This document shows positions 1,034 through 58,800 of a DNA stretch of 64,000 nt, in pieces. The DNA lies in NCBI RefSeq assembly GCF_002113885.1, contig NW_018406103.1, positions 37,865 to 101,864 on the forward strand. The letters are read 5' to 3'. A program made the position numbers and the translations under genes. Below the pieces are notes generated by a model. That model worked only from the letters and a program-made list of their open reading frames with translations. It searched no databases and had not been told where the DNA came from. Within the stretch, counting starts at the first letter, position 1; every line of letters begins with the position of its first letter. This stretch comes from Mizuhopecten yessoensis (taxonomy: Eukaryota).

Positions 1034-1447
1034 TATATTTAAATGAAATACAACATAAAAAAACTGTTGCTTGAAAAATACCATATATTCACTAATAATA
1101 TATGATATGGAAAGTTAAAATAGCATAATTTTATGCAAATAAATGGCAAAACTATGTGATAAAGTTGAGAAATGAAAGAGTAAACACTTAAGAGTTAAGA
1201 TAAAACCGACATTGTTAAGTGTGCATCATTTAAAAAATGTGATCAAATGTGAATACAGGCTATTTGGAATAAATAGTTCCACAAACCTTTAGTCATGATA
1301 ATTGGTTAGGGATATCTCGGATTCCTCACAATTATACATCCTATGCACTACCAACTGGGTCAACAAGATTAATATAAGTTGATATAACATGTTATTTAAT
1401 AATTGAAGTAAATTAAATAAAGTCTTATTTAAGCAAAACGAACATAC

Positions 1448-17797: not shown

Positions 17798-18670
17798 GAG
17801 AGGCGTGCACCATATAAATGCTAAGTATAAGACACGTGTTTCTTACATATCAAGAGTCGGGAGAAACACTTCGTTTATAGTTACAATCAAACAAACAGAC
17901 CAACGCATCATGATATAGTCACTTCATCATAAGACGTAAATGTTTTATGATTTGAGTACCTGATGCGAATATTTTATATGTATACAGTCTGTATACAAAT
18001 GTTTAAATTCACGATTTAAAGCAAATTCCAAGCAAGTGTCGTTCTTTACTAGCACGTGCATTATCAGTTATGTTTCGAATAATGTACTGATCAAAGATTA
18101 TTGGAAATATCCACCGTAAGTATGCAGTTACTTTAATAGTTACAAGCTTTGCTTTAGATTTACGAGAGTTTGAATTTATCACGTAAATATTTACATGCGT
18201 CATTAGCACCAATCGATGGTTTGTACTGCGACTTGTACGCAATCGAGGAAAAGTCAATACGTTCCAAATATTCATGCGCTGGGACGCTCCACCGTTTACT
18301 TGAAAAAGCATTGTCTGGTAGTGTTGATAATGCTAGATAGACTTTCACAATTTCTACTACATTTCTTTTCCATGCAGTCATATAGCACGTAGAGAGAGGG
18401 ATTTGGAATTCTTTCATTTTTCCTGCAATAGCAAAAACAACCACAAAATAACTTACTAAATATAATTGAAAGGAAATACAATCAACATGAAAATATAAAG
18501 GGTAATTCAAACAACATCATACCTTGATTTAACAATGAACATCTTAACTAGTACTTTCTTAACGCAAAAAGGTACATTCATTGGTGCATTTGTCGCTAAC
18601 ATTACCGTGCCGCAAAGTAATAAAGTTCATAAACTTATAAGAATATAGGTATGCAAATATTAAACTTCCA

Positions 18671-19450
18671 AAGACTTACATATATGTAAAGTATAAATGT
18701 AGAAAGCTTTATCCCGACTGCTACATATCTCATCGCGCTGAGGGTTGAAGCCATGTTTACGTTATTATCATGCATAAGCGAATTCATGATATGTCACAGG
18801 AGTGGAATCCAACGTATTGGTGATTATTTGTTCGACAGGGTCAGGGGTACTGTTCACGCAATAAACGTGCTTTCAACTTATTTATTTAGATCTATTACGT
18901 CACGTGGTATGCTAAACGACCCTTTAATTTAAGACTTACATATATGTAAAGTATAAATGTAGAAAGCTTTATCCCGACTGCTACATATCTCATCGCGCTG
19001 AGGGTTGAAGCCATGTTTACGTTATTATCATGCATAAGCGAATTCATGATATGTCACAGGAGTGGAATCCAACGTATTGGTGATTATTTGTTCGACAGGG
19101 TCAGGGGTACTGTTCACGCAATAAACGTGCTTTCAACTTATTTATTTAGATCTATTACGTCACGTGGTATGCTAAACGACCCTTTAATTTAAGACTTACA
19201 TATATGTAAAGTATAAATGTAGAAAGCTTTATCCCGACTGCTACATATCTCATCGCGCTGAGGGTTGAAGCCATGTTTACGTTATTATCATGCATAAGCG
19301 AATTCATGATATGTCACAGGAGTGGAATCCAACGTATTGGTGATTATTTGTTCGACAGGGTCAGGGGTACTGTTCACGCAATAAACGTGCTTTCAACTTA
19401 TTTATTTAGATCTATTACGTCGCGTGGTATGCTAAACGACCCTTTAATTT
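18671..19450. repeat. 260-bp unit x3, near-perfect, in intron 4 of paralog 2
   Basis: Units start at 18671, 18931 and 19191. I see one substitution (cacgtgg/cgcgtgg). Confidence 0.95.
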
Positions 19451-22400
19451 ATAAATGAAGTAGTATTAACAAATAAAAACGTGTGATAGCATGCCAGGAT
19501 GTGACAAGAAATATCGTCCTTATAAAAATGCCCATTGGAGTATGTGTGACATTATACACACTAAATCTTTATGGCAAGTAAGAAAACAAAATGTATTTCC
19601 TTTTTGTTTTATAACTTTGAAATAAGTGTGGTACATGTAGGAACGGGAAAAGTAATACAAATATTGCTGTTAGACAAATAGGAACTGCCGGTTTTAACAA
19701 GCTGTTATCCAGCTGATAAGAGCGAGGGTTAGCGGCCCTGGATCTTTAATGGTCACATAGTATTACGACTTAAGATTTTTTTTTTTTTTTTATCATGACA
19801 GAAATTAAGATTTCATAAACTGACACATACCGAGCTGAAAAATTTACTGACGAGCAGAAACTATCTATCCAGTGCACCCCAATACTTCAAACAGATCCTA
19901 AAAGATCTTTGTCTAAATGCAGGAAAAACAAAAGAGAATCCTACTGAATCTCGGTCTGGGCTTTATGTAATTTTACACTAAGAATACTGTTGCTAATTTC
20001 TATTTTGTTATCTTTTCTTTAAGAACACAATCAAAATGGAATGGGGATTGTCTGGAAGCTTTTTACTGATTCAGATAAAATTAGTGTAAAATTTTGCCTA
20101 ATCACGTTTGTCGTAAATTTTTAAAGTTATGTTTTAGGTAAAACTATCATGATAAATAATTTCAAACTTGTTATCCCTTTTTTGCGTTTGCCTAGTGAAA
20201 TATTATCCATCAAATTAAACTGGATATATAGGCTTACTTTCAGCTTCTATTACACTGGACACCATTAGACTCTCAAGTAGCTTGGCTCTGGCATTAGATA
20301 TATCCCGTTGAAGTCTTTTGCTGATATTTATGTAATCTGGAACTGCCTCAACCTCTTCAGTTGTTAGGAAAGAAGCTAATCTCACAACACATTTTTCAAC
20401 CGTGTTGAGATTATATTGTTCGATCCAGCGTAGGTATGTGACGACCTGTGATGGTGGTATATATATATCCCTCTCGGAGACAGACCCCACGTGCTTCCGG
20501 ATGACTTCTTCACATTCTTTGAGCAAGTTTTCTGTCCGATATTCATCTGCTAATGGGAGTACAGTTTCCAGTGTTGCAACTATGAATACACAAGATTTAG
20601 CGACAATGATTAGTTTTTTTTTTACTTCGGAAGTCGATGCAATTTGAAGTAGGTTTGGAGCATTTTCCAATAATCCTAGAATGTAACAGCTAGATATTTC
20701 TCAATCAAGAGTACGTTGTTCAGAATTGTTTAACCGCACGCTTACTGCATTAAATAATTTTGATCATTATTTTAACGATAACATCTAAACACTGAGTGAA
20801 CATGCTTTTCCTTCTGCAGAGAGTATGCCCTGTCAATGGAAGGAGTGGGTATGAAAACCAAAACGTTCCTATGCAATCAATGTACTATTGTCACTCTTTT
20901 AAATTTAATGCCATAAATGAGAAACGTTGGCCACTTCCTTTTGAAGTTGATGGCTAATTTTCATTAAATTACGTAAAACTTACCATAACTTAAGACAATT
21001 TCATAGGCCTTCCTTTACTTTTCTTTAAACATGTCTTCTTGAGTTGGGAGGCATATCATTTAAGTATAAAAAAGCCATACGTGCTTTCATATTTAGAGCT
21101 TTACATACTAAATATATGGCAATTATTACACTATGCTCGCCAAGTTTTAAGGTTGATACTTTTTAGTTGTGAAAGAAACAAACATTACTCTCATACGAAA
21201 GAAATATAGATACTCTATTTTAATTGATAAATCATACATCATTACTGCTTTAAGATTACCTAGTAGTTTGTCTTTAAAAAACATGTTCAGCCATATTTGC
21301 AACATTTTAACATGCAGATAGAGTGGCGAAAACAATGTTTCATCGTCATAATGGAAAGTGTTTCATGATGCAAACCATATTCGTGAGAGAATCTTAAGAT
21401 CATAAAATACATTTAACCTCCAAATGGCAGTGTAAACATGATGTCCATTTTGTCCCAAAAACCTTAAAAGGACACTATTGTGATTTGGTATAAGCTCGTT
21501 AAAAAGTTTAATAAAAAAACAGCACAATTACGGGTCTATCTATTATTTTACAAGCTGAAACTAGTAAATGTTCCACCATTTTGGGGCTTTTGCAAATGCT
21601 GAATGCTAATACCAAAATCAACAATGTTTAACCCTCATTTAAAGTATTGTTCCATACACATTATTCATAACTTAGAGTTATTCCTGGTGTGCTCAAAATT
21701 CATATTTATCTTGCAGAGAGTCTGATTATCAAAGTATTTCACTTCAAACGCTAAAATATGTATATATTTATAAATATTTGAGTTATATTTGTTTTAATCA
21801 TGTTTTAAGCCACGATTTCATTCCATACGTTTTAAAAAGTTCAAAATGCGTAAAAAATAATTTATTGTTCATATGGTAATACCTGGTTAATTTTGTTAAG
21901 TCGTGTTATTACTAAATGAGTATGTTTAAGGTCATATATTCATCATCGTGTTCCATAATTACTTGTAACGTGGTCAGCGAAAATGGGCAGAAGACATTTT
22001 AGGAATGTGGCCATGTCATCATATGTTTTCCCAGGGAACTTCAGCTCCCTTTTTGTGTCGTCAGTGCACTCGTCTTGTTGCCATTCTTTCTTTAGCCAAG
22101 CATCAAATACAGGTGAAGCTGTTGAGAGTAAATCTTTATTTACATGAAGGTGTATTTCCTCGACCACCAGTGTTACGTCGTTCAGCAGAAAGCCTGGAAA
22201 AATCTGAGCAAGAAAGTTGAAGGGAACATCAAAGAAACTATTCAAAGAGCAGTATTGTATCACATGATTTAAAAAAAAGTTTGAACCATAGCAAATATTT
22301 TTTTGTCTACCCATGGAGAGACTCTTGAATGATTTAAAGGTTATTCCTTCCATTTGACTATTTCCTCATGGTTTTTTTTCTTCAATACACTTTGTTTAAA

Positions 22401-33139: not shown

Positions 33140-33965
33140 GAATCTGTACAATGTCAACAATTTCACAAGTAATAACCTCTGTACGATGTCATCGATAATA
33201 CAAGTAGTTACATCTAGTCAATGCCATCGATATCACAAATAATTATATAGCTGTACCATTTCACCGATATTACAAATAATTATATCTGTATTTCACCGAT
33301 ATTACAAACAATTACATCTGTTCAATGTCAACGATACTACAAGTAATTACCACTATACAATGTCATCGATATCACACGAAGGAACATCTGCAAAATGTCA
33401 CCGATATTACAAGTATTTACAAAAAATCATAACTGTACAATGTCACCGATATTACTAGTATTTAAATATGTACAATAACACCGATATCACCAGTAACTAC
33501 AGCTGTATAATGCCATTGATATAACAAGTAGTTGCATACATACAATGTCACCGATATTACAAATAATTACATACATACAATGTCACCGATATTACTAGTA
33601 TTTAAATATGTACAATAACACCGATATCACCAGTAACTACAGCTGTATAATGTCACTGATTTAACAAGTAGTTACATACATACAATGACACCGATATTAC
33701 AAGTAGTTACATACATACAATGTCACCGATATTACCAGTGATTACAGCTGTATAATGTAATTGATATTACAAATAGTTACATACATACAATGTCACCGAT
33801 ATTACAAATAATTAAATTTGTTTAATGTCACCTATATTACCAGTGATTACAGCTGTATAATGTCATTGATATAACAAATAATTACATCTGTACCATATCA
33901 CCGATATTACAGTACCAGTAATTACCAGTATACAATGTCACCGATATCAACAGTAATTACAGCTG
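33140..33965. repeat. 35-bp minisatellite, left arm
   Basis: Unit tgtcaccgatattacaagtaattacatctgtacaa. Confidence 0.95.
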
Positions 33966-33966
33966 C

Positions 33967-36900
33967 TTATCACATACTTAATTACTACTTAATACGCAAT
34001 TCCCGCCCTATATGATACAAAATGCATATCAGGATTTTCGGAACACCTCTTGACTATTCGGTCCGGAACACATATGGAGTTATCGTGCCGTTTCTATGCG
34101 TGCGCAGCAGACGAGATTCTATGAAAAAATGTCGCGTTCGGCTCAAGGTGAGATGATTTTGAACTCGTTGGCAAATAGGATAATGGAGTTGGACGATCTT
34201 ATTGACAAACAAAACATGGCGAAGGAACACGACGAAGCGGAGAATGTCGTTTTAACAGAAACTATTAATGAGGTCATGTGTGAGGACGAAACAGTGTGTA
34301 ACGAGGCCGAGCCAACTCACCATTTTGTGGAACAGATGAGAAATGTAAACACTGTACGTAAAACTGTATCTTACCTGAACAAGTTTACAACGTGGCTTAA
34401 ATCATAGAATGAACAGCGACAACTAGGAGAGTTGGACTGAAAGGAACTGGACCAATACCTTGCATTGTTTTTCATGAATGCACAGAAATCAAACGGTGGT
34501 GAATATGAACCGGACACTCTGAAATCAATCCCGACCAGTATTAATCGACACCTGAAACAGAAAGGGCTTACTGTTGATATTATTTCCGACAGAGAATTTA
34601 CATACTCAAGGGAAGAATTAGCATCAAAGAGGAAACTGTTGAAACAACACGGGAAAGTAAACCGTGCTAAGCAAGCGGAGCCTTTGACGACTGAGGAAAT
34701 TGACATCATGTACGAGAAAAATCTCCTGGGAAAAGGTAAACAAACACTTATGATTTGAATCATTTGATTATGTTATCATGCATATGCCACATTAAAGTTG
34801 GATAGCTAGCCGATACAATAGTTAATGACCACTTGTTTACTAATAATAGTAATATTCCAAGGTAAACTGGTCAGTTTCAAGTGAAACGTTACATTTCTGG
34901 TAATTTATTGAGTAAAGGGAGATAAATCTCATACTCATCAATGCACACTAACCAAATTAAGTACATTTGTAAATAAAATTGTTTATGACCATGGTGAGCT
35001 TATGCAATACCGCAGCGTCTGTCGTCCGTCGTCCGTCAACTTTTCCTTTAAAACGCTTCTAGTCCTGAACGGCCAAGTAGATTTTTACCAAATTTGGTCT
35101 GAAGCATCCTTAGGCCAAGGGGACAAAAATTTATATAAACGGTGGGTGTTGCCCCACTGGGGGCAGAGGGGCGGGGCCCATTATATGGGAAATACAGGTA
35201 AAACCTTTAAAATCCTTCTTCTACCGAAGGGATTAATGGATGATATCCTAATTTAGTCTGGAGTATCCTTGGGCCTAGGGGACTAAATTTTGTATAAATG
35301 GTGGGTCTGGCCCCTCAGGGGCCTGAGGGGCAGGGCCCAATAGGGAAAACATAGCAACATAATTATTCTTTAAAATCCTTTTTCTTCTGTAGGAATGAAA
35401 AGATTTGGTGTGGAGCATCCTTGGGAAAAGGGTCTTAATTTTGTATAAACGGTGGGTCTGGCCCCCCTGGGGACTGAGGGGCGGGGCCCAACAGGGGAAA
35501 TATAGTTATGTACTGGTATCATTCCATACAGCAAAATCATTTGAAAAAAGATAAACAAGTAAGTGTAATCTAGTAAAAGCGTCTTGTGTCTTTAACGAAT
35601 CTCTGAACCATCTCCAAGATACTTATATTCATATTGATATCGGGTCTTCGACATCCATAAAGAAAAGTCTGTGTATTTAATAGAATAATGTCATTAAGAG
35701 CATAAATGGAGGTCAGGAGAATTTGCCTTTGATTAGTATACAGAGTACAATGGAGCATCCTTGAGTAAAGGGGAACCAATTTAGTATAAACGTTTGGTGT
35801 GCCCCCCCCCCCCCCCCCCTCCTGGGACCTGAGGGGCGGGGCCCAATAGGGGAAATAGAGGTGAAACCTTTAAAATCCTTCTTCTACCGCAGGGATTAAG
35901 GGATTTTATCCTAATTTAGTCTGGAGGAGCCTTGGGCGAAGAGGACTAAATTTTGTATAAATGGTGGGTCTGGCCCCCCTAAGGGCTGAGGGGTGGGGCC
36001 GACTAGGGGAAATATAGCAAATTCTTTAATATCCTTCTTCTTCTGTAAGAATGAAAGGATTAGTTCCATATTTGGTCTGAAGCATTCGTGGGTAAAGGGG
36101 TCTCAATTTTGTATAAACGGTGGGTATGAAACCCTAGGGGCAGAGGGGTGGGGCTCTGTTTGAAGTTTGTTCTCGCTATATCTCAAGTACTGGATGGTTC
36201 TTTCTGAAATTTCATATGAAATTTTTTGTAAATTATGATTTACAGTTTATAATAATTTGTATTTACAGTAAATATGGCTGTATAGAAAAATAATACATTT
36301 ATTGTACTGTCAACAGGAAATCCGAGGTTTCCCGTCATGATGTATCAAGAGTTTGCAGCCAGACGGCCAGACAGCATAAAGAGGGACGAGGATCCATTCT
36401 ATCTGGGGGTACATAAGAAGTGCAATGAAAACAGCGAATACTGGTATGTGTCGCAACCAATGGGCAAAAATACCTTGGGGTGTATTGTGAAAACAATGTG
36501 CGAGAGTCAGGGATCCCAGGCCGAAAGGTCAATCATAGTGCTCGGAAAACCGCGATTAGCACGTTGGTACACGCTGGAGTGCCGCCGACACTGGTACAAC
36601 AACACTCAGGACACAAAAACCTTGCCTCTATTAACAATTACAGTACAGCATCAATCCAGCAGCAAAAACATATGTCTTCTATATTGTGTAGCTACTCCAG
36701 CTCGAAATCGACAATGGCGGCCTGCGTACCTAGTAATCTAGATGACATGCCGGGTCGATCATTTCAGGAATTGGTAGAGTCAATTTGAAATGATATCGAA
36801 CACTTTCAGGACATTGCTCCTATTACCGCCCAAAAAGAAGGAAAAGAAGTGATGTCTAACATTCCCAAGCCAACAGGATGCCCCAGTATGTTTTCTAGCG

Positions 36901-37385
36901 CGACCATTAATGGTGATGTAGTGTTTAACTATGGTAATAACAATACAAGTAAACGCATTCGCGTTATTTATGATTCTGATTCTGATTAAATTAATTTGTC
37001 AAATGAGCATCAGATCATAAGTGAAGCTGATCAGATGGACATCTGATAGAATCATCAAATGGACATAGGCCATATTATCGGACACCAAGATTAACGGAAA
37101 CAGACAGTTAGTTAAGGATTAACTTGAATATATTTTTCATGTTATAGCTCCATAACATAAAAAATATATTCAAGTTAATCCTTATAATTTAATCTACTAT
37201 ACACAATCCCTATGGAAATACACTTATATTGATGGACTATTTCTCATAGAAATTATTGCGCTGCTGTATCAGACAATCAACAGCGACGTTACAAACGGCG
37301 ACGTCATTTTTTTACGTTATGGGCTGATAACATAATTTTTTAAGCCAATGAAAATGCTTGTTACAAGCAAGATTAAATTATTCAT
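33967..37385 (+). mobile_element. Crypton (tyrosine-recombinase, DUF3504-like) transposon, inactivated, intron-containing
   Basis: 34096-34736 reads ELDQYLALFFMNAQKSNGGEYEPDTLKS..INRHL. 36317-36790 reads DPFYL..WYVSQPMGKNTL..NHSARKT..SGHKNLASINNY, with the YR catalytic H-x-x-R, H and Y. Stops at 34405 and 34438, frameshift ~36505. Right boundary approximate. Confidence 0.85.
34982..36160. mobile_element. HINE/Helentron-like non-autonomous element with ~155-bp tandem repeats, nested in the Crypton intron
   Basis: Terminal ggtgagcttatgc plus (gtcc)n microsatellite. Repeats of ttttgtataaacggtgggtctggcccc..ggggcggggccc. Confidence 0.7.
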
Positions 37386-37399
37386 ATATATTCTCTATA

Positions 37400-38645
37400 T
37401 AATGTCACCGATGTAACAAGTTATTACATCTGTACAATATCACCGATATTACAAAAAATAACACCTGTTTAATGTCAACGATATTACAAGTAGTTATATA
37501 CATAAAATGTCACCGATATTACAAGTGATAACAGCTGTATACTGTCATTGATATAACACGTAGTAACGTCTGTTAAATGTCACCAATATTACAAATAATT
37601 ACATCTGTACCTTGTCACCGATATCACCAGTAATTACAGCTGTATAATGTCACCGATATTACAAGTAACAACATATGTTCAATGTCACTGATATCACAAG
37701 TATTTGAATATGTACAATGTCACCAATATCACCTGTAATTACAGCTGTATAATGTCATTGATATTACAAATAGTTACATACATACAATGTCACCGATATT
37801 ACAAATAATTACATTTGTTTAATGTCACCGATATTACCAGTAATTACCAGTGTACAATGTCACCGATATTAAAATGAAGTTACATATGTCACCAATATTA
37901 CAAATAATTACAGCTGTATAATGTCATTGATATAACACGTAGTAACATCTCTTAAATGTTAGCGATATTCCAAGTTGTTACATCTGTACAATGTTACTGA
38001 TAATACATATAATTACACCTGTTTAATGTCACTGGTATTACAAGTAGTTACATACATACAATGTCACTGATATTACAAGTAATTACATCTGTACCATGTC
38101 ACCGATATTACAAGTAATTACATCTGTACCATGTCACCGATATTACCAGTAATTACCAGTGTCCAATGTCATAAATATCACCAGTAATTACCAGTGTCCA
38201 ATGTCATAGATATCACCAGTAATTACATCTGTTCAATGTCACTGATATTATAAGTATTTAAATATGTACAATGTCACCGATATTACCAGTAATTACCAGT
38301 GTCCAATGTCATAGATATCACCAGTAATTACAGCTGTATAATGTCACCGATATCATACGTAGTAACATCTGTACAATGTCACCGATATTACAAGTATTTA
38401 AATATGTACAATGTCACCGATATCAACAGTAATTACAACTGTATAATGTCATTGATATAACACGTAGTAACATCTGTTTAATGTCACCGATATTACAAGT
38501 AATTACATCTGTACAATGTCACCGATATTACAAGTAATAACATGTGTACAAGGTCACTGATATGACAAGTAATTACATATGTACAATGTCACCAATATTT
38601 CAAGTAATTACATTTGTACACTGTCACCAATATTACTAGTAATAA
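37400..38645. repeat. 35-bp minisatellite, right arm
   Basis: Same unit as 33140-33965; period 35 (e.g. 38097 to 38132). Confidence 0.95.
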
Positions 38646-38699
38646 CGTCTGGTGTTATTCTTCTATATGCATATAATCTGTATAAAAAACTTCATAATT

Positions 38700-38829
38700 T
38701 CAAGTGCATTTACACATCTGAAGCACATGTCGTTCCATTCCATCACGTACATTATCAACATCGTTCGAATAATGTGCTGACCACAGAGTTTTGAATTCTG
38801 ACCTGTTTATCGATAGTGACGTTAATCTA
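38700..38829 (-). CDS. 3' end of exon 5 of a probable additional BTB paralog, truncated by the N at 38830
   Basis: Reads ..SEFKTLWSAHYSNDVDNVRDGMERHVLQMCKCT*, homologous to the ends of paralogs 3 and 4. Confidence 0.6.
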
Positions 38830-38837
38830 NGATTCTT

Positions 38838-41800
38838 CTATATGTATACAACCCGTATCAAAAACTTCATAATTTCAAGTGCATTTGCACATCTGAAGTA
38901 CATGCCGTTCCATGCCATCCCGTACTTTATCACCGTCGGTCGCATAATGTGCTGACCAACGTTTTTAAATTCTGACTTGTTTATCTTTAGTGACGTTAAT
39001 CTGTTTATGCTTTTTGCATAACTTCTTGAGAGTTTCAACCGATCCCAAATAGATATGCATGCAAAGGTAGCAACATGTGCGATCGATGGTATAATTTGCG
39101 GCGTCATGTTGCTAACCACTTGCCCAAAGGGCACCCCAAAAGCCTGAGTAACCACTTGAATGTTTGGTGGGTGAAACATTGACTGGCCTGGAGCCGTATT
39201 TGGTGTTGTTGTTGATGCTATGAGAAACGCCTCCACAATTTCTATTACATTATTTTTCCATTCATCCATATAATGAATGGAGAGTGGAATTTTGAACTGG
39301 TTCATCTTTTCTGTAACAAAAAAATATATTAAAAATAATAAAAAAAGCTAATCAATTATTAAAATAATATTAACATGATAATTCAAACGCCACACCTTAA
39401 TTTAACAAAGAGCATCGATATAAGTACTCTCCAAGAGAAAAAAAGGTAAAGTCATTCGTATTCGTTAACAGGTAAGGAAGCACGGAATACGATCTAAGAA
39501 ACTTGTTAACATGGCAGACATTGGAATCCCATACATACTTATAACTATCAAGAGCACTCATATTCTTCAAATAGATTATTAAGGATACCCGTCCAACTGC
39601 AGGCATGGGGATCCTTGAATAGCAAATAATATAAACTCGCTAAAAAGGGGGTTCAGATGGTCTGGAATGTTACTACTAAGGGAAAGTTTAACGTAAAAGT
39701 TGCCCAATCACGTTTGTTGTAAAATTCGTTTGTGAAGTCACCATTATTGTAGGTGAAAACATGTCACGATATATTATTTCAAACATAATATCCTCTTGTT
39801 TTTTGTCTGGTGAAATGTCTCTATGAAATGAAACTAGATACATAGGCTTACTTTCCGCTTCTGTTACACTGAACACAAATAGACTCTCAAGTAGCTTGGC
39901 TCTGGCATTAGATACATCCAGTTGAAGTCCTGGGCTGACATTTTCGTAGTCTGCATCTGCCTCTAGCTCTTCGGTTTTCAGGTACGATGCTAACCTCACA
40001 ACACATTCTTTACCCGTGTGGAGATTATATCGGTCAATCCAGCGTAGGTATGTGAAGACCCGGGAAGGTGGAATGTATATATCAACCTTGGAGACAGACT
40101 CCACGTGGTTTCGGATGACTTCCACACATTCTGTGATCAAGTTTTCTGTCCGATACTCATCTGCTAAAGGTAGTACTGTATCCAGATTTTTATCTGTAAA
40201 TACACAGGATTTAGAGGGAAGTATGATTTATTTTGTTACTATAAATTCAGATGAAATTTTAAATATGATTCGACGCCATTTTCCTCCACATTTAAACAGA
40301 TAATCCTAATATTTATGTCTTGGACATACTTAAACATTATTTGAAAAGGTGTTTTGACTGAAATGTCACTCCAATGGAAAATATCTATGTCTACTCTAAT
40401 ACCATTAATCATTGAGTGATCCCGCGTTTCTGTCGTGTATAGAGTATATCCTGTACAATGTGAACAATCTCTGCCCTGAGCGCCAAGAACTGCGACACTT
40501 TGAAGAATCATCACCGACCAAAAGTTGTACCCGCAAATGATCCCATAAATTCAGTATTCAATCGATACACTATTATCCATCTTTCATCATCGAATATCAG
40601 GGGGCTACGTTCGATCACTTACGTTCTGTGCGCCCCTTTCATATGCCCTGGCAAAATTTAAGACAAATAATGAGTTATTTGATTGGTCGCAGGAAACAAA
40701 ACTGCCCCATCGCTAGGCTGATACTAGACAGGCGGGATAAACATCCGAGACGTTTTCAAACAATACTGTTTTTTTTTACACAAATATTTGAGACTGCTTG
40801 TGGAAATGATCATACCCAACCGAGACAGACTCAATATTGTGGAAGAATTTTTGTGAAATCTGTACAATTATGAATACTGAACTAGTCCTGTTCTTAGTCT
40901 ATTAAATGTGTCCTAGTAACGGCACGTTTCATCATTACCTGTGATTTTGTCAGGGAAAAAGGGCAGAAGACATTTTAAGAATGTGGCCATCTCATCATAT
41001 GTTTTCCCAGGGAACTCCAGCTTCCTTTTAGTGTCGTCAGTGCACTCGTCTTGTTGCCACTCTTTCTTAAGCCAAGCATCAAAAACAGGTGAAGCTGACT
41101 CTAGTAAGGCTTTGTTTACATGAAGATATTTTTCTTCTACTACCAGTATCACATCGTTTGGCAGAAAGCCTGGATCTATTTGAGCCTAAAATTTGAAAAA
41201 AAGTATTTACGGACATGTTCAAAAAATTCATTCAGTGTACATTACTTTTATTCATTCATTATCAATCCGATTGATACTATATCCAATCAGTTAGTGATTA
41301 TGGGAATTATATAAAGATGTTGAATTCGGAATCTTCATTCCTGAATTCTTAATTTAAAGTAAGGAAATCACCAGATTTTGTTCCTGATGTCAATTACGAA
41401 CGCTTTAGAGGAAAAACTATCCAACATCCTTACATATTACATATGGTGACCCTTCCTAAAGACATGGGCTGGTTTTTATATCTTCTTGTTTATTTAGTAA
41501 CATTGTAAAGTATAATCAGCTGAACTTGTGCATGAATAACATCTTTATAACTTGCAATATATATCAAATTTTCCGAACATAATAGCGATTGATAAAAGCA
41601 TACGTTTTAAGCGTGAGGCTACTTACTACACATGTTTCGTCCTTTACTTCAATATCCAGTATTGGCACTGGTTCGATGTGATCACCAGACTGATCTTTGT
41701 CGTATTCTAAACTTTCATCGCATTGGTTTTGAAGTACGACACCAGGTTCCTGCATTCTATAAAGATTAAAAAAAATGTTTTGAGTTAACGTACATATCAA

Positions 41801-44752
41801 TTGGCGGAGACATAAATATAAAACAAAATTAATATACAAAATTATATTTATATCATATTTGGTTACAGTCTTTCAGACTTTAAATGTAACCACCGTTATT
41901 CTTCAAATTGTATAAAAATAGATACGTGATGAAAATCGGATCCATTATCTACAACCCTTAAAACTGAGACATCCACTTTCATAACTTAAGAATGAATAAG
42001 GTGTAGATTGGATGCCATTAACGATAGTAAACAATGAATTGTTTCCTATTGAAGTTAAGTTGATTTTTTTAGGAGAATCAAGTATGGTAAAGAGAACAAA
42101 ATAAATGTCTTTATATTTTGGTATCATTATCTAGAAATCTGTTAGGATTCGTTGGAGTATATATCACAAAACCCCCCATTAAGAAATAGTAGGTTAAAGG
42201 CGTTGTAGCACAGCGGACAAACATGCATGCCAAAAGAGAACAAGGCCAGACTCTACTCTTAAGTCGGCAAACCTATTACAACGCAAAATAACTGCCATCC
42301 TTTCGGGGTACCTGCTCCGTTTGAAACAGCAACGACCGCTAGATAATACAACCGGTTTTGTTTAACGTAACAATTTGTAACTCAAAAATTGTCTCTAACG
42401 AGATAATCACATACCACTCTAAGTGGTGGATCACTCGGCTCGTGTGTCGATGAAGATCGCAGACAGGTTCGTAAATTAATGTGAATTGTAGTTCCTATTA
42501 AACATCGACATCTTGCAAACTGCAGGCACATCAACGTTGCGCCTTGTACCGTACACCTCCCAGTTATTGCATCGGGAGCGGTCTCAAATGATGAATCACA
42601 GTCTCCAAGCGACTAACATAAATACCAATTCGGCTGAAGAATCGCATACGACAAAAAAATCCTAAAGGTCAATCTTGTGTATTGTTATCTTATTATATCT
42701 TTAAAGACACAGCCTGATCGGTGCACGTCTTATCAAATGGGGAAAATGGCCCTTTAAAATACAGTGACAAGGAAGTTAAGGTCGCTATATGTGACGAAGC
42801 AATAGAGGTGATGGCAAGTCGTTGATGTCATTTAACGCAAAGTAAGATAACATTATAAACGTGTTTTTCTGAACTGTAGTGATAGTCTATTATTGTATGT
42901 CACTAAACAATATCATAAAAAGTTAATCTTTAAGAGTGCGTAAACAATTTCTAATCTAGTTGAATAATTGTAATTGTGCAATCGGGGTTCTTTGCACAAA
43001 TCACTCGACAAACATTGGTTGTTTCTTGTAGTTTATTACATTATCTTGGAATCCCTAAAATGATATAAAACACTTATTGTACAAAACAGACACATACTAG
43101 ACATATTGCGAATCAAACACACCGCACGGTAACTTTTACATGACGCGAACAATGGAATATTAAAAAGGACAAGAACACAATTCTATGACAACAACAACAA
43201 CCTAATCAGTTTAACCAAACAATGGAATAATAGTATCGTTACATGCAAATTTCAATTATAGAACATTCTCAGTATAGAATGTAATTCATATTTTACTTTT
43301 ACTTTTAGTCACGACTAATTCAGACAGAGGAATTTACGTCAAGTCTTAAATAAACACCTTCCAAATAATAATAATTGATTAATTACATGTATATATATTC
43401 TGTAAATGACTTACCCTGCATGTGGTGCTGAGGATAGCTTAGCTCAATTATCGATCAAGCATACCAATCAAATCAAGAAGCCATCGATGATATATATATA
43501 CTTTCCACTACCAGCATTAAATGTATGTCTAACCCCTTGTAAGTTAAGTGCCCAAGTGAACAAAGAGAGCAAGAAAAACGGAAAAGAAAAGAAGCGTCGC
43601 ATTGCGCATGCATGTCCGAAATGGTCAGTCCGGTCAACAAAAGAGTACAACACATAACACATATGTTACACAATCATAAGCAAATTTCAAGAAAAAATTA
43701 TTTATTTTCTATCAAATCCAAATAATCAATATTAAAGCCAAAATATTAATAAACACTTAATACAACAGGGTGCCACATAATCAACAGATGTACTTTCACA
43801 TTCCTTGACTATTTCAAGGACACCTTAAATGCTCGTTCCTAACATGTAGAAAAATGAACTATATTTATTGAGTATAAAATACACGTTTAGCTTAAAAACC
43901 TATTCTTCCATATAATCATCTTGTTAGTTAAACCCATGTGTTAGTTTAAAGATATACATTAATAATTTAAACAAAACTTATTTCTAAGATAATAACACTG
44001 TTATTCTCATTTACAATATCACAGAAAACATAAAGCTGAATTTAAGTGTGTGTGCTTTTGTTGTTTGCAGGCCATTTATTAGGTGGGTTTAAAGTGTGTC
44101 ACCCGATAACGCGAGGATATGCAGGTTGCGCAGCAATGCTACTTGTAACAGGTAAACGATCAACACATGCAAGGTTCTTCTTCAGCTATGTAAACACTAA
44201 AATACCGGTAACAGGTCAGACGCCGATATACTGTACGAATATGATCACTCCGCTTTAAGTCCTTTGCCAATTTACATATATCACGAGAAAAACTCTTGAC
44301 GGGTAAGACTTGACATGCCATGGATACAATAATGGGACACTACGAGTTAAAATAAAAGAGTAATTATTAACGAGTTCTGGACCACACAAGGCATCAAAGA
44401 ATGCATCTATATGTGTAGCCCGTGCAGAATAGGATTTTTTTCTGCTTTGCGGTCAATGAAGAAGATACAAATCTGCTGTCCCCATTGCAACATTTGTGAT
44501 CCAGATTTGTTTCTTTTTCACTTCCTTATTCTTTTGTTTCGTGGTGTTTCCCGATGCACTAGCCTTCGTATGACTTTAGCCGTTGTGTGAACGTTACTAG
44601 CTGTGACCCCCAAACAAACAAACAAAATAGCACATGACTACATTGTAAAACTAGATAGATGGTGATGCAAATACTGCATACAAGCACATATAGTATTATG
44701 TTAAATAGCACGCTAGCTGAACCTCTGTCCTGTTACGAAATACTTACGCCAT
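38838..44752 (-). CDS. BTB/POZ gene paralog 3. Exons: 44748-44752, 41627-41756, 40939-41185, 39852-40193, 38838-39310 (398 aa as assembled; ancestral stop at 38875)
   Basis: All junctions are GT-AG and in phase (5+130+247+342+473 nt). A 1-nt deletion at ~38960-38966 relative to paralog 4 changes the C-terminal frame. Confidence 0.85.
42415..42515 (+). pseudogene. 5.8S rRNA pseudogene fragment (5' ~100 nt), possibly with preceding ITS1 remnant
   Basis: actctaagtggtggatcactcggctcgtgtgtcgatgaaga..taatgtgaattg..aacatcgacatcttg matches the conserved metazoan 5.8S 5' half, with substitutions. No 18S or 28S nearby. Confidence 0.9.
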
Positions 44753-52899: not shown

Positions 52900-55800
52900 T
52901 CAAATGCATTTGCACATCTGAAGCACATGTCGTTCTATGCCATCACGTACTTTATCACTGTCGGTCGAATAATGTGCTGCCCAAAGTTGTTTGACTTCTG
53001 ACTTGGATATGTTTAGTGACGTTAATCTGGTTATGCTTTTTGCATAGCTTTCTGAGAACTTAAACCGATCACAAATAGATATGCATGCAAAGGCGGCAAC
53101 AATTGATGGTGAGATTAGCGGCTTCATGTTGCTATCCGCTGACACGGATAAAAGGCTAAAAGGCGCTGAATTTGTTGGGCATAATCTAAGTCCAGAAAGG
53201 TTTGCAGCAATTTTTTGGGATGGTGTTGATGTCAGAAACATCTCAACAATTTCTCCTAAATTATTTTTCCATTCAGCCATATATTGAGAGGAGTGTGGGA
53301 TTTTGAACTGGTACATCTTTTCTGTAAAAAAAATAAAAAAAAAATATAGAAATAATAATAAAACAAAATAAAAATTAAATTAAATTACAATGATATTCAC
53401 ATAACATAAACAAGGTCATTCAAACACCACACCTTAATTAAACAACGAACACTGATATTAATACTCTCCAAGCGAATAAAAAGTACATTCATTCGTATAC
53501 GTGTCGTTAATACTTTTTTACATGGCATACATTCAAATCATTTACATACTATTAAATATCAAGTGCACTTTTATACTTCAAATAAACTTTATAGAATCCC
53601 TGTCCCACTGCAGGCAATATGGCGGACATTGAAATCACATACATATACTTCAAATAGACTTATAAAGATACCCGTCCAAATGCATTGGTTGGTTGAAGGG
53701 TTTTGCGCCTACATGAATCCGCTCTTACGGGTTTCATTTCACTGACGGAAGTCGGTGTTCTGTCGGCGTGAGGGAAGTTGCCTTCCCTCAGGGGGTGGTC
53801 TGAAGTCGCCTATGCTATATCCTATCTTTATATTTTGATGAAATTTGGAGAGGACTCCTTGGTCCGAAATGGTTTGTCGCGCCGGTTGATGCAACTTTGG
53901 CTGTTGTTTCTAACTAGTGTTTTTGTATCGTTGGGGGAGGTTAAGAAAATGGCCAAGAAGGCTTGTAATAATGAATATATATATATTTTTTATTTTTTTT
54001 AGAAATTATTTGTATATTTTTTAAGTGTATCTATTGTATATATTCTTGTTCTTTTATAGGGAAGTATTTATATTATATTTGATATGTACTTGGGTCTCTA
54101 ACTTCCGGTTGTGCCCGACAGTAGAGAAACTCTCTGCTTCCGTTAGGTACAGTACTTTGTTTCTTTTGTCAGGCTTGGCCGGAGTCTGAGATTATCCAAC
54201 GGGTCCCAATGGTGTATGTTGGGTTTTACCTTTAATTCTATGGAGTATGTTTTTATGCTTTAGAAGAGAAAAATAAAATAAAGATTTAGATAAATATTTG
54301 AGCAATCCGAAAAAAAAGAAGGTAAAAATTGACTTATATGATGAGGGTCTTACGTAAAGGGGGGTCTTTAATTTACTGGGCTAATAATATATATGTCTTA
54401 TTTTAACTATTATTATATAAAAAGATGGGGAGATCACTGGTCGTATCATATCATGATGTCGTATATGGCGTGGGTCTAGGAGGAGGGCGTACCATATACA
54501 GGCTGTCCTTTAACTATAGCCTACTCTATTTTGTGTTTTGTTTTGTTCCTATATTTTGGAAGTCCGTCGAAACGTCTAAAAAATGTTATCTAATCCAACC
54601 CTATCCTCTGTGCCGGCGTTAACGCGCCTACTCTTTCGATAATACAAAGAGGGATTTGTTACGTGCAGGTTGGACCCTCCTACACGGGACACCGTTTATA
54701 GTCCCCTCCGCCGGACTGTATGTCATTGGTTAATGGTTAGTGTCATGCAGGTGCTAATTAATCTTGATTTTTGGCGTCCATTCTTGAAACTGAATCCAGT
54801 CTTTGCACACTATGGACATCTTTCCTTCATCAATACCAATGTTCTCGTTCAAATAAAACTTTTCCTTTGCTTTCGTCTGTAACTGTTCACTAATCTGACT
54901 TTTATAATTATGATTGTGAGTATTAGTATAAGTTAGTTGTGGGAGAGGGGAGGGGGGGGGAGTGACGGGTTTGTGCATTGGTGAGAGTTAGAAGTAGGCA
55001 GAAGAGGGTTGGGTAGATGCGGGTTTGTGGAGGGGTAGAGAGGGGGCCATGAGTTTCTATTGAGATTAGATTATATCAGTAAAGTTATTGGAGGATAAAA
55101 TAAAGAAAAGAATTAGGATAGAATTTTAACTACAACAGGGTTGTCGCAGTTAGGGATTGGGAGTTTGTTATGCATAAGTAGGATTGAAATTTAAAGTCGG
55201 GAGTGTTTTCAGGGGGTTATCGGGTTCGAGATATTGTCGCATATTTTTCGATCCTACCTGGGCCGAATTGTGTGTCCAAAAATGTTTGCTATAGGTTTCG
55301 CTAGGCCGTGATAGATGACTTGTTCGCTTATGTTAGCGCGGTTTTGATTGGTTACATGTCAAAAGTAGGGGGTGTTTTCTATGTGCGGATTTCGAGTGAA
55401 TTTCGATCCTACCTGAGTCCAATTGTGTGTCAAAAAATGATTGCTATAAATTTCACTAGGCCGTGATAGATGACCTGTTCGCTTATGTTAGCGCGGTTTT
55501 GATTGGTTATATATCAAAAGTAGGGGAAGTTTTCTATGGGCGGATTCGAGTGAATTTCGATCCTACCTGAGCCGAATTGTGTGTCAAAAAATGTTTGCTA
55601 TAAATTTCACTAGGCGGTGATAGATGACCTGTTATGTTAGCGTGTTTTGATTGGTTTACAGTTTTTAAAAGTAGGGGGAGTTTTCTATGTGTTGGTTTGA
55701 CTGGGTTTCGATTCTTATCTGTTATCAACATACCAACTGCAGGCACGGGTATCCTTAAGTAGCAAATCACATAAACTCAATAAAAGGGGGGTTCGCAAAG

Positions 55801-58800
55801 TCTGGAATGTTACTACTGAGGGAAAGATTAGTATTAAAGTTGCCTTATCATGTTTGTTGTAAAATTCGTTTGTGAAGTTATAATTATTNAAACTCAATAA
55901 AAGGGGGTTCGCAAAGTCTGGAATGTTACTACTGAAGGAAAGATTAGTATTAAAGTTGCCTTATCATGTTTGTTGTAAAATTCGTTTGTGAAGTTTAATT
56001 ATTGTCATATTTTAGGTGAAAACAGATCACGATATATTTTTTCAAACACATTATCCTCTTGCTTTGTGAATTATTTTCTTTTAAATGAAACTAGATAGAC
56101 AGACTTACTTTCAGCTTCTGTTACACTGCAAACAAATAGACTCTCAAGTAGTTTGGCTCTGGCATTAGATACTTCCAGTTGAAGTCTTAGGCTGACATTT
56201 TCGTAGTCTGCAACTGCCTGTAGCTCTTCGGATTCCAGGTACGAAGCTAACCTCACAACACATTCTTTACCCGTGTGGAGATTATATTGTTCGATCCAGC
56301 GTAGGTATGTGACGACCCGAGAAGGCGGTATGTATATATCCGCCTCGAAGACGGACTCCACGTGCTTTCGGATGACTTCCACACATTCTGTGATCAAGTT
56401 TTCTGTCCGATACTCATCTGCTAAAGGTAGTACTGTGTCCAGCTTTTTATCTGTAAATAACCGGATTTAGAGGGAAGTATGATTTATTTTGTAACTATAA
56501 ATCAAGATGATATTTAAATATGGTTCTACGCCATCTTCCTCCACATTTAAACAGACAATCCTAATATTTATGTCTCGGACATAATTTTATATTATTTGAA
56601 AAGGTGTTTCGACCGAAATGTCCATTGGAAAACATCTATATCCACTGTAATACCATTAATCATTGAGTGATCCCGCGTTTCCGTCAAGTACAGAGTATTT
56701 ACAACGGGAACAACCTATTCTCTGAGCGCCAAGAACTGCGACACTTTGAAGAATCATCTCCGACCAAAAGTTTTCGTACCCGCAAATGATCCCATACATT
56801 TAGTATGCAATCGATACACTATTATCCCTCTTTCATCATCGATTCCCGGGGGGCTACGTTCGATCACTTACGTTCTCTGAGCCTTTGTTTTTTGTCATAG
56901 CAAAATTTAAGACACACGATTAGTTATTTGATTGGTCGAAGGAACAAAAATTGCCCCATCGCTAGGCTGATACTAGACTAGCGGGATAAACATCCGAGGC
57001 GTATTCAAACAATACAGTGGGTCCTATTCTAAGTCTATTAAATGTGCTTATACTATTATTTATTTTGCAAACTAAAATTGTTACTAAAAAAATGATCATA
57101 GTTACAGCACATATTTATTATTACCTGTAACTTTGTCAGGGAAAAAGGGCAGAAGACATTTTAGGAATGTGGCCATCTCATCATAGGTTTTCCCAGGGAA
57201 CTCCAGCTTCCTTTTAGTGTCGTCAGTGCACTCGTCTTGTTGCCACTCTTTCTTAAGCCAAGCCTCAAAAACAGGTGAAGCTGATTCTAGTAAGGCTTTG
57301 TTTACATGAAGATTTTTTTCTTCGACTACCAGTATTACATCGTTCGGCAGGAAGCCTGGATCTATTTGAGCCTAAAATTTGATGAAGGTTTTTACGGACA
57401 TGTCCAAAGAATTCTTTCAGTGTCAGTTACTATTATTCATTCATTTGTCAAAAGTCTCATAATCAGAGTAATGCTATATTTAATAAGACAATGATTAGGG
57501 AATTATAAGAAAGATGTTGAATTGGGAAGCTTCATCACTGAATTCATAATTTAAAGTACGGAACTCACCAGATTTTGTTCCTGATGTCAATAACGAACAC
57601 TTTAGAGGAATAACTTATACAACATCCCTACATATTATATTTTGTGATCCTTACTATAGACATGGGCTGGTTGTTATATCTTCTTGTTGTTTTAGTAATA
57701 TTATAAAGTATTATCATCTGAACTTGTGAATGAATAACATCCTAATAACTTGCAACATATATCAAAAGTTCCGAACGTTATAGCGATTGATAAAAGCATA
57801 CATCGGCTACTCACAACACACGTTTCGTCCGTTACTTCAATATCCAGTATTGGCACTGGTTTGGTGTGATCACCAGACTGATTTGTGTCGTATTCTAAAC
57901 TTTCATCGCACTGGTTTTGAAGAAGAACACCAGGTTTCTGCATTCTATAAAGATTAAAAAAATGGTTTGCCTTAGCGTACATATCAACTGGTGGAAACAT
58001 AAATGTAAAAAATATAATATAAAAAAATACAATTTTATCATAATTAATTAGTCTTTCAGAGTTAAAATGTTAACACTGTTATTCTTCAAATTGTATAAAA
58101 ATAGATAAAATATCTACAACCCTTAAAACTGAGACATCCACTTTTATAACTAACTAACTAATAAATAAGTAAGGTAAAGATTGGATGCCATTAACGATAG
58201 TAAAAAAATCATTATTTCTTAATCAATTCAAGTTGATTTTTTTAAGAAGACTCCAGTATAGTAAAGTGAACAAAATGAATGTCACGGTTTCATTATCTAG
58301 AAATCTGTTAGGGTTCGTTGGAGTATATATCACCAAAAACATGAAGAAATAGTAGTTTCAAGGAGTGTTAACACAGGGGACAGGGCTAGACTGTATCCCA
58401 TGAGTGAAGGGGAATCCTGTCATGGATGTTGGATTCGGGGCTCTCAAACATTATTCATTTTGGAAAACATAGTTTTGACAAACTGCAACCTTTTTCGGGG
58501 TACCTGCTTTTGTTTAAAGAGCAACGGCCGCCCAAATCTATTTTCACGTAATAATTTGTAACCCAAAAATGTCTCTAACGTGATGATTACATACCACTCT
58601 AAGTGGGGGATCACTCGGCTCGTGTATCGATGAAGATGTTGTAGTGGCTTTTTTATTATTGTTTTTATGTTACTAAACCATATCATGAAAAGGCAATTTT
58701 TCAGATTGTGTACACTTATTCTAATTTTGTTGATTTATTGTAATTAAAAGGTATACTTTCACTTTCGTTTTGGTTTCCTTAAATTGGGCTTAAGGTATAA

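What the first reader, a model, noticed from the sequence alone, without database searches (positions are those of the whole stretch)
39085..53233. Hypervariable loop in exon 5 between conserved flanks
Seen: paralogs 3 and 4 differ at only 3 of 82 residues in the BTB exon and share alignable introns, yet the loop after EIVExFL is barely alignable and differs in length. P3 (~39085-39221): IASTTTPNTAPGQSMFHPPNIQVVTQAFGVPFGQVVSNM. P4 (~53105-53233): TSTPSQKIAANLSGLRLCPTNSAPFSLLSVSADSNM. P2 (~18215-18337): ALSTLPDNAFSSKRWSVPAHEYLERIDFSSIAYKS. The frame is preserved in all three. Coding DNA diverging faster than adjacent introns suggests diversifying selection on a recognition or bait surface (inference).
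Basis: partly seen in the sequence, partly recalled or inferred. Interest (0 to 1): 0.75.

Follow-up and report, generated by a model that had tools for sequence, protein, structure and literature searches.

The report
Hypervariable linker in scallop BTB genes
A short stretch in the last exon of a scallop-only family of BTB genes really does change far faster than everything around it, but it looks like a floppy, indel-tolerant linker, and selection for diversity is only hinted at, not shown.

Summary
Between paralogs P3 and P4 a ~100-nt block in the last exon (39114-39221 and 53134-53232, minus strand) is 48-54% identical. Introns are 80-84% identical and the rest of that exon 85-88% (Fisher p=1e-13).

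The genes form a tandem, Pectinidae-restricted BTB family. The variable block occurs in every paralog examined, at 18-49 codons. It is S/T/P-rich and AlphaFold2 predicts no structure for it: pLDDT is below 50 for residues 274-306 of the P4 protein, between confident helices.

In paralog pairs that still align, my codon model gives omega about 2.1 in the loop and 0.8-1.0 in the flanks. The chi-square p is 0.002-0.01; 3 of 120 neutral simulations reach the observed statistic. The unalignable core is saturated at synonymous sites too. The region was chosen after the fact. Flank windows also reach omega 2. The family exchanges sequence, so introns are a poor clock.

P3 carries a 1-nt frameshift downstream, P2 has stops, and P1 has lost the exon.

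Verdict: real and moderately interesting; diversifying selection is partly supported. Scan note s1-529826 describes a BTB cluster with such a loop on another piece of this genome.

The parts
39114..39221 (-). P3 hypervariable block: DNA with almost no similarity to P4.
   Evidence: 48.5% identity to P4, against 85-88% in the same exon on either side. 91-92% identical to the copy on contig C76746.
38875..39310 (-). P3 last coding exon (exon 5). The acceptor AG ends at 39311. The family-consensus stop lies near 38875 (counted from an alignment, approximate). The open frame as it stands runs on to 38841.
   Evidence: Acceptor and phase fit the exon-4 donor. The same exon 4 to exon 5 junction is present in the database protein of P4. 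ORF limits.
38961..38961 (-). P3 1-nt deletion in an A-run, relative to the three closest paralogs. The conserved C-terminal tail is out of frame after it.
   Evidence: Four-way alignment and frame translations. In independent DNA contigs (X5) one contig (depth 46 of 92.2) has the extra base together with C76746-type letters; the rest matches the window.
38657..38828 (-). Second, tandem copy of the exon-5 tail of P3, separated from the first copy by a single N at 38830. Its consensus-frame tail is open.
   Evidence: blastn 86.6% over 172 nt. TRF period 175, 2.0 copies. Translation.
53134..53232 (-). P4 hypervariable block.
   Evidence: No other copy in the assembly; only its last 41 nt match C76746 at 90%. 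It lies within residues 271-310 of P0002, where pLDDT is below 50 for 274-306.
52900..53321 (-). P4 last coding exon including the stop codon. It is intact and is the end of database protein P0002 (XP_021354343.1, 379 aa).
18229..18333 (-). P2 loop. The open frame ends at 18163, with the stop codon at 18160-18162 and more stops after it, and without the family's conserved tail.
   Evidence: The sister copies on other contigs (L017, L018) also lack the tail in frame.
39852..41755 (-). P3 exons 2 (41755-41627), 3 (the BTB exon, 41185-40939) and 4 (40193-39852), with introns 2 and 3.
   Evidence: Splice sites read and coordinates. The exon-2 end was corrected to 41627 in the work. Pfam BTB on the exon-3 frame, E=8.3e-07. 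An RNA contig joint 41184>41626 with GT..AG on the minus strand.
56109..57371 (-). P4 exons 3 (57371-57125) and 4 (56450-56109).
   Evidence: blastn of the P3 exons, 95.5% and 92.1%, without gaps. Translations.
37018..37043 (-). Terminal exon used by the database model of P3 (P0013, 323 aa). That model leaves exon 5 at a GC donor inside the loop, near 39121.
   Evidence: Peptide located; acceptor read. This is annotation only: no read or contig showed this joint.

Best explanation
The block encodes a flexible linker inserted between two helices of the C-terminal helical region of a scallop-restricted BTB protein family. The proteins have a BTB domain followed by a SPOP-like BACK-type helical part. 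Their genes sit in tandem clusters that gain and lose copies.

Selection keeps the reading frame open, because the four helices after the linker are needed. It puts no detectable constraint on the linker's sequence or length. The linker therefore changes by frequent in-frame indels plus substitutions at or somewhat above the neutral rate, and it becomes unalignable once paralogs are about 10-15% diverged.

The contrast with the surroundings is sharpened in two ways. The flanking helices and the BTB exons are under purifying selection. Paralogs also exchange sequence, which keeps alignable parts, introns included, similar.

Shown here: the divergence profile, family-wide length variation, the predicted lack of structure, the in-frame indels, the mosaic history, and the damage in P1-P3.

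Inferred: that the linker is dispensable in sequence, and that exchange spares it.
For: Divergence profile:
- P3-P4 identities are exon 2 0.908, intron 2 0.844, exon 3 0.955, intron 3 0.833, exon 4 0.921, intron 4 0.797, pre-loop 0.851, loop 0.485, post-loop 0.856, tail 0.881.

The linker across the family:
- It is variable in all 10 intact exon-5 copies aligned and in the 15 full-length proteins from three scallop genera.
- Loop length is 18-42 codons in 13 copies. S/T/P content is 35% against 16% in flanks. Order-promoting residues are 29% against 42%.
- AF2 of P0002 has mean pLDDT 74.9. pLDDT is below 50 only at residues 1-46 and 274-306. Helices lie at 255-270, 311-326, 329-340, 346-357 and 362-377.
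- Of 10 loop gaps in the 7 pairs aligned, 8 are multiples of three. The two 1-nt gaps are a compensating pair in L012-L015.
- No gap falls in the pre-loop or post-loop codons of the five close pairs.
- Loops remain collinear and homologous: z is 3.9-5.9 against shuffles.

Gradient of constraint:
- Omega is 0.27 in exon 3, 0.45 in exon 4, and 0.8-1.0 in the exon-5 flanks.

Episodic change:
- P3 and its sister copy keep 91% loop identity with no indel. The other sister pair, P4-L003, has 58-61% identity and a 48-nt length difference.

Mosaic history:
- Quartet-informative sites are 15:0:0 in intron 2. From intron 4a to the tail they are 63:1:1, though intron 4b and the loop are misaligned for P4 and L003 in that four-way alignment. 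From exon 3 to exon 4 they are 8:8:6.

Damaged copies.
Against: - Lack of constraint alone cannot make a region diverge faster than introns, yet the loop does. This holds for P3-P4 and for L007-L011, where the loop is 81% identical and the intron 96%, p=3e-6.
- Loop omega exceeds 1 in all four alignable groups. The shared estimate is 2.1, p=0.0024 by chi-square. Only 3 of 120 neutral simulations reach the observed statistic.
- dS in the alignable loop parts is not raised, so a simple local mutation hotspot is not supported.
- The low pLDDT may partly reflect the shallow, hypervariable alignment of 15 sequences.
- That exchange spares the loop is inferred and was not shown.
Confidence: 0.5

Rival explanations
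1. The loop is a specificity-determining surface of a family of Cul3-type substrate adaptors, and it is driven apart by diversifying selection. Amino-acid changes and in-frame indels are favoured.
For: - Loop omega is 1.69, 4.23, 2.02 and 2.50 in four groups. The shared estimate is 2.1, with a grid range of 1.5-3.6.
- Loop and flank omega differ, p=0.005-0.009.
- Taking only the groups of intact genes gives 2.1, p=0.010.
- Gap-free columns give 1.7-4.3.
- The proximal 15 loop codons of G3 give omega 3.9 with 2dlnL 5.9.
- 3 of 120 neutral simulations reach the observed statistic.
- The loop is faster than its flanks in 3 of 5 close pairs.
- The fold is closest to the SPOP BTB+BACK Cul3 adaptor, Z 11.4.
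- Lineage-specific expansions of BTB adaptors with fast-evolving binding domains are known. I saw only the search listings of PMC4091423 and PMC12951971.
Against: - The region was chosen after the fact.
- The data are small, 31-42 codons per group.
- Pooled count test gives p=0.099.
- Flank windows also reach omega 2-2.5.
- The unalignable core is saturated at synonymous sites as well.
- Two of the four groups consist of copies with frameshifts or stops (G1, G4), and their flanks also give omega above 1.
- The loop is predicted to be disordered.
- Cul3 binding and substrate binding were not tested.
- The codon model is my own code and ignores recombination and multi-nucleotide changes.
Confidence: 0.3
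2. The loop is an island that escapes homogenisation. The paralogs are older than their flanks suggest. Gene conversion or unequal crossing-over keeps exons and introns similar, but tracts stop at the length-heterologous loop, which alone shows the old divergence.
For: - Different gene segments have different nearest relatives. Quartet sites are 8:8:6 from exon 3 to exon 4 but 15:0:0 in intron 2.
- P3 versus its sister copy is 0.75 identical in the 5' flank, 0.90 in exon 4 and 0.96-0.98 from intron 4b to the tail.
- L007-L011 are 96-97% identical upstream of the loop and 87-90% downstream.
- Identity drops within about 10-20 nt on both sides of the loop.
Against: - From intron 4a to the tail the quartet signal is uniform, 63:1:1 (with the alignment caveat for intron 4b and the loop).
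- The sister pair P3/L002 kept a collinear 91% loop, so the loop was carried along in the latest event.
- No donor for the P4 loop exists in the assembly.
- An island kept in three lineages would itself call for selection against conversion.
Confidence: 0.12
3. The block is not a functioning coding sequence in these copies. It is either decaying pseudogene sequence or an unrecognised intron or alternative splice region.
For: - P3 has a frameshift, P2 has stops, and the P1 exon 5 is displaced and broken.
- The database model of P3 splices out of the loop at a GC donor.
- No RNA read or contig covered the P3 loop.
Against: - P4 and at least nine other copies have intact exon-5 frames running through the loop.
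- Loop indels are in frame.
- The database protein of P4 includes the loop.
- The helices on both sides are predicted to pack with pLDDT above 90.
- Contigs cannot show absence.
Confidence: 0.05

Closest known systems
SPOP / BPM-type BTB-BACK substrate adaptors of Cullin-3 ligases
   Same: Pfam BTB domain, E=2.1e-11. The predicted structure of residues 47-230 superposes on the SPOP BTB plus C-terminal helical part: 8dwv_E, Z 11.4, rmsd 3.6, 166 residues. KBTBD and KLHL BTB-BACK proteins follow in the list.
   Different: There is no MATH or Kelch domain. The N-terminus is a 46-residue low-confidence tail. About 140 further C-terminal residues (exon 5) have no Pfam family and were not covered by the structural matches. 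Cul3 binding was not tested.
Lineage-specific expansions of BTB adaptors with fast-evolving binding domains (nematode BATH genes, grass MATH-BTB genes)
   Same: Tandem, lineage-restricted expansion. A conserved BTB part sits next to a fast-evolving part, with signs of copy gain and loss. Of the papers I saw only the search listings of PMC4091423 and PMC12951971. The original nematode and plant study is recalled, not read.
   Different: In those families the variable part is a folded MATH domain with site-specific positive selection. Here it is a short, predicted-disordered insertion, and selection is not established.
Intrinsically disordered linkers, which evolve fast and accept indels
   Same: Low predicted order, S/T/P enrichment, length variation, in-frame indels and omega near or above 1. 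PMC4494057 and PMC6028134 report raised indel rates, reduced negative selection and frequent positive selection in disordered regions; I saw only the search listings with the starts of their abstracts.
   Different: The divergence here exceeds that of the neighbouring introns in several pairs, which relaxed constraint alone does not explain.
Hypervariable mature-peptide regions between conserved flanks and introns in mollusc toxin and antimicrobial-peptide genes (recalled, not checked here)
   Same: A sharply bounded hypervariable coding block with conserved flanking coding and non-coding DNA, in a mollusc multigene family.
   Different: Those are small secreted cysteine-rich peptides. This is an internal loop of an intracellular-type BTB protein, and no signal peptide or cysteine framework was looked for or seen.

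Membership tests
BTB/POZ domain proteins (Pfam PF00651) | Match to the BTB profile above the curated cut-off | tested here: met
   P0002 scores 44.4 bits against a cut-off of 20.5, E=2.1e-11. All 5 family proteins scanned match. The P3 exon-3 frame alone scores 29.6 bits.
BTB-BACK (SPOP/KLHL-like) architecture | Helical 3-box/BACK-type extension directly after the BTB fold | tested here: inconclusive
   The predicted model aligns to the SPOP BTB+BACK over residues 47-230, Z 11.4. No Pfam BACK match at E up to 1 in 5 of 5 proteins. The Atlas gave only weak leads to BACK families, score 0.86.
Cullin-3 substrate adaptors | Binding of Cul3 through BTB/3-box and of substrates through a second module | not testable with these tools
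   No interaction data. Only fold resemblance to known adaptors.
MATH-BTB (BATH) family | A MATH domain next to the BTB domain | tested here: not met
   No MATH match in 5 of 5 proteins at E up to 1. One relative carries the source name 'BTB and MATH domain-containing protein 38-like'; that protein was not itself scanned.
Regions under diversifying (positive) selection | dN/dS significantly above 1 under models robust to alignment, recombination and choice of region | tested here: inconclusive
   Shared loop omega is 2.1, p=0.0024 by chi-square, and 3 of 120 neutral simulations reach the statistic. Against this: the count test gives p=0.099, the core is saturated, flank windows also exceed 2, and recombination is present.
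Intrinsically disordered linker | No stable structure, composition biased to disorder-promoting residues, length variation | tested here: met
   This rests on prediction only. pLDDT is below 50 for residues 274-306. S/T/P content is 35% against 16% in flanks. Length is 18-49 codons.

The most novel reading that the evidence does not exclude
The scallop lineage has built its own family of Cul3-adaptor-like BTB proteins. In this family a short hypervariable loop, inserted in a novel C-terminal helical domain, sets target specificity. The loop is diversified by positive selection on substitutions and in-frame indels, in an arms race or recognition system, for example against pathogens. Gene exchange keeps the scaffold uniform and spares the loop.
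Probability: 0.25. Interest if true: 0.65.

Novelty: new member of a known kind. Interest (0 to 1): 0.4.

Why it matters
If the loop is under diversifying selection, this uncharacterised family would be a candidate recognition system in an aquaculture species. All named hits are from three scallop genera, and they are annotated only as 'uncharacterized' or 'BTB domain-containing'. The loop would then be the place to look for targets. If it is an unconstrained linker, the case is ordinary. It is still a useful caution: in tandem families that exchange sequence, an exon block that is more diverged than the neighbouring introns does not by itself show selection.

Tried and rejected
- Hidden intron. 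I rejected this for the family. Ten copies keep one open frame through the block, indels are in frame, and the P4 database protein contains it. Only the P3 database model leaves the exon inside the loop.
- Transposon or foreign insert. I rejected this. The P4 loop has no other copy in the 988-Mb assembly and the P3 loop has only its sister copy. The loops are collinear with residual homology.
- Donor paralog for a converted loop. None was found.
This is not the pattern in P3-P4, where both sides are about 85% identical. It does resemble L007-L011.
- Folding exon 5 alone. Mean pLDDT was 47.6, so I did not use that model for a fold search. The fold of the exon-5 helices stays unassigned.
- RNA support for P3. 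The raw RNA run X23 (about 19% of it read) had 40 reads, all on a repeat at 37000-37482 and none on the gene. RNA contigs of X17 cover exons 2-4 and 38831-39017 with letters of the sister copy, and nothing at 39093-39736. Contigs cannot show absence, so P3 expression stays open.
- Literature. Two searches for this family (listings only) gave nothing relevant. Supplements were not consulted.
- Failed calls that were corrected or dropped. One search had a frame error and was corrected. One search printed nothing. One search had a bad search term and was corrected. In the four-way alignment, intron 4b is misaligned for P4 and L003 because of large insertions; I disregard those cells and use the pairwise value.

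Full report
**What is there.** The window is G000:C2776:37865-101864 of a 988-Mb assembly. Named database records identical to its genes come from Mizuhopecten yessoensis. Four paralogous genes lie on the minus strand. I read the splice sites from a P3-P4 alignment. The P3 coding exons are exon 2 (41755-41627), exon 3 (41185-40939, the BTB exon), exon 4 (40193-39852) and exon 5 (from 39310). The exon 4 to exon 5 junction and its phase agree with the database protein of P4, P0002 = XP_021354343.1, 379 aa. Window sequence was searched exon by exon, and full-length work used database records.

**Check of the observation.**
- The quoted peptides are present.
- The BTB exon differs at 3 of 82 residues between P3 and P4.
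- P3-P4 identities by feature are exon 2 0.908, intron 2 0.844, exon 3 0.955, intron 3 0.833, exon 4 0.921, intron 4 0.797, exon 5 before the block 0.851, the block (39221-39114) 0.485, after it 0.856, and the tail 0.881.
- The drop is sharp on both sides and highly significant against introns and flanks (p about 1e-13).
- The loops are still collinear homologues, z=3.9-5.9 against shuffles.
- Neither loop is a repeat. The P3 loop has one 93% copy on contig C76746. The P4 loop has no other copy.

**The family.**
- Searching the assembly with exon-5 peptides gave 20 matches of 30 candidates. A profile search gave 23 of 38. The copies lie mainly in two clusters, on C2776 and C76746.
- A profile of ten intact exon-5 peptides found only 8 representatives among 1.84 billion proteins.
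- A search with P0002 found 20 proteins. Every named one is from M. yessoensis, Pecten maximus or Argopecten irradians. One has no name.
- Pfam sees only BTB.
- AlphaFold2 on P0002 with 15 family sequences gave mean pLDDT 74.9 and pTM 0.70.
- Residues 47-230 of that model match the SPOP BTB plus BACK-type helices, Z 11.4, rmsd 3.6, 166 residues.
- The exon-5 helices were not covered by any match. Exon 5 folded alone was too uncertain to search, pLDDT 47.6.

**Nature of the block.**
- It is variable in sequence and length in every copy: 18-42 codons in 13 copies and 49 in L003.
- It is richer in S/T/P (35% against 16%) and poorer in order-promoting residues than its flanks.
- In the model it is the only internal stretch with pLDDT below 50 (residues 274-306). 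It lies between helix 255-270 and four confident helices.
- Of 10 loop gaps in the 7 pairs aligned, 8 are multiples of three. The two 1-nt gaps form a compensating pair.
- So the frame is under selection, while sequence and length are not visibly so.

**Damaged copies.**
- P3 lacks one base in an A-run near 38961, which puts the family's conserved tail out of frame.
- Independent DNA contigs (X5) show the window's form at about half the depth. The other half carries the sister copy's letters.
- The sister copy L002 has a different, 2-nt deletion.
- An RNA-library contig (X17) carries L002-type letters but neither deletion. Intact versions may therefore exist in other animals.
- P2 runs into stops 22 codons after its loop.
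- The P1 exon 5 lies outside the window and is broken. Its database model ends in another exon at 462-506.
- The database model of P3 leaves exon 5 at a GC donor inside the loop and ends at 37018-37043. No read or contig showed that joint.

**Tests of selection.** I could not run PAML or HyPhy. I wrote Nei-Gojobori counts and an M0-type codon likelihood with F3x4 frequencies and fixed topologies.
- Exon 3 gives omega 0.27 and exon 4 gives 0.45. The P3-P4 dS is 0.14 in both.
- In the four groups where loops align, loop omega is 1.69 (G1: P3/L002), 4.23 (G2: L006/L008), 2.02 (G3: six copies) and 2.50 (G4: L016-L018). Flank omega is 1.72, 0.81, 0.79 and 3.43.
- A shared loop omega is 2.1, grid range 1.5-3.6, 2dlnL 9.18. 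With only the intact groups it is 2.1, p=0.010. Loop and flank differ, p=0.005-0.009.
- Simulating omega=1 on the fitted trees, the estimator is unbiased (medians 1.00-1.09). 3 of 120 replicates reach the observed summed statistic, and 11 of 120 have all four omegas above 1.

**Results against selection.**
- The pooled count test on five close pairs gives p=0.099.
- The unalignable core of G3 has dS 2.7 and dN 7.6, with no likelihood gain.
- In P3-P4 and P4-L003 the loop pS (0.46, 0.50) is as saturated as pN.
- 20-codon flank windows also reach omega 2-2.5.
- The loop is no faster than its flanks in L006-L008 and L016-L018.
- The partition was defined after seeing the variability.

**History of the genes.** I fetched the two closest genes from C76746 and aligned the four genes. 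Quartet-informative sites favour (P3,L002),(P4,L003) at 15:0:0 in intron 2. From intron 4a to the tail they are 63:1:1, although intron 4b and the loop are misaligned for P4 and L003 in that four-way alignment. From exon 3 to exon 4 they split 8:8:6. P3 versus L002 rises from 0.75 identity in the 5' flank and 0.90 in exon 4 to 0.96-0.98 around exon 5. Sequence exchange among paralogs is therefore real, and a neighbouring intron is not a safe clock for the loop. Loop change is also uneven. Sisters P3/L002 keep 91% identity and no indel. Sisters P4/L003 have 58-61% identity and a 48-nt length difference, with 94% identity just after the loop.

**Reading.**
- I favour (0.5) a predicted-disordered, frame-only-constrained linker that turns over by in-frame indels and substitutions at or somewhat above the neutral rate. 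The contrast is sharpened by constraint and exchange in the flanks.
- Diversifying selection on a recognition loop (0.3) fits the omega estimates and the SPOP-like fold, but it is not established.
- An island that escapes conversion (0.12) and non-functional or mis-modelled sequence (0.05) are less likely.
- Earlier scan notes agree that this is a birth-and-death BTB cluster with a hypervariable C-terminal loop (s1-529826), and that Crypton-like elements sit in the 35-bp minisatellite nearby (s1-529832).
- I found no paper on this family (listings only).

Noticed in passing
window 38657-39002, with N at 38830: The tail of P3 exon 5 is present twice in tandem (175-nt unit, 86-87% identity), and a single N sits between the copies. 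The second copy keeps the family's tail frame open while the first is frameshifted. The N means an assembly join cannot be excluded.
   Followed up: partly
window 38831-39017 (contig of run X17): A 1914-nt contig from an RNA library carries letters of the C76746 sister copy. It has neither the P3 1-nt deletion nor that copy's 2-nt deletion. Intact, possibly expressed versions may therefore exist in other animals.
   Followed up: partly
window 53684-55733: Intron 4 of P4 holds about 2.1 kb that is absent from P3. It includes a 155-nt tandem repeat (55246-55689) and lies next to a 116-nt duplication (55772-56003). The region has a strong GC skew (0.27 at 54001-56000).
   Followed up: partly
window 18671-19451: Three copies of a 260-nt unit, 99% identical, lie in intron 4 of P2. 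Each carries the same 80-codon open frame on the plus strand.
   Followed up: no
window 33142-33965, 37394-38651, 52352-52671; ORFs 34054-36785 (+) and 51740-52123 (-): 35-nt minisatellite arrays lie downstream of exon 5 of P3 and P4. Open frames with QRICH1 and DUF3504 matches (Crypton-like) lie beside them. This was already noted by the scan (s1-529832).
   Followed up: partly
window 208-1043 and 462-506: Transposase-like open frames lie between P1 exon 4 and its displaced, broken exon 5, which sits outside the window at C2776:34260-34644. I did not scan these frames against any family library. The P1 database model ends in an exon at 462-506 inside this region.
   Followed up: partly
window 37000-37482: This stretch has depth in the thousands to tens of thousands in all contig sets, and it holds the only raw RNA reads laid. 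It is a high-copy repeat next to the terminal exon of the P3 database model.
   Followed up: no
window 39852-41185 and the matching parts of P4, L046, L047: Quartet-informative sites conflict (8:8:6) from exon 3 to exon 4, while the rest of the gene supports one tree. This points to sequence exchange among paralogs in the BTB-coding half.
   Followed up: partly
G000 contigs C2776 and C76746: The two clusters share the order of the P4-like and P3-like genes at 5-11% divergence. DNA contigs of run X5 show both forms at equal depth. Whether they are two loci or two haplotypes is open.
   Followed up: no
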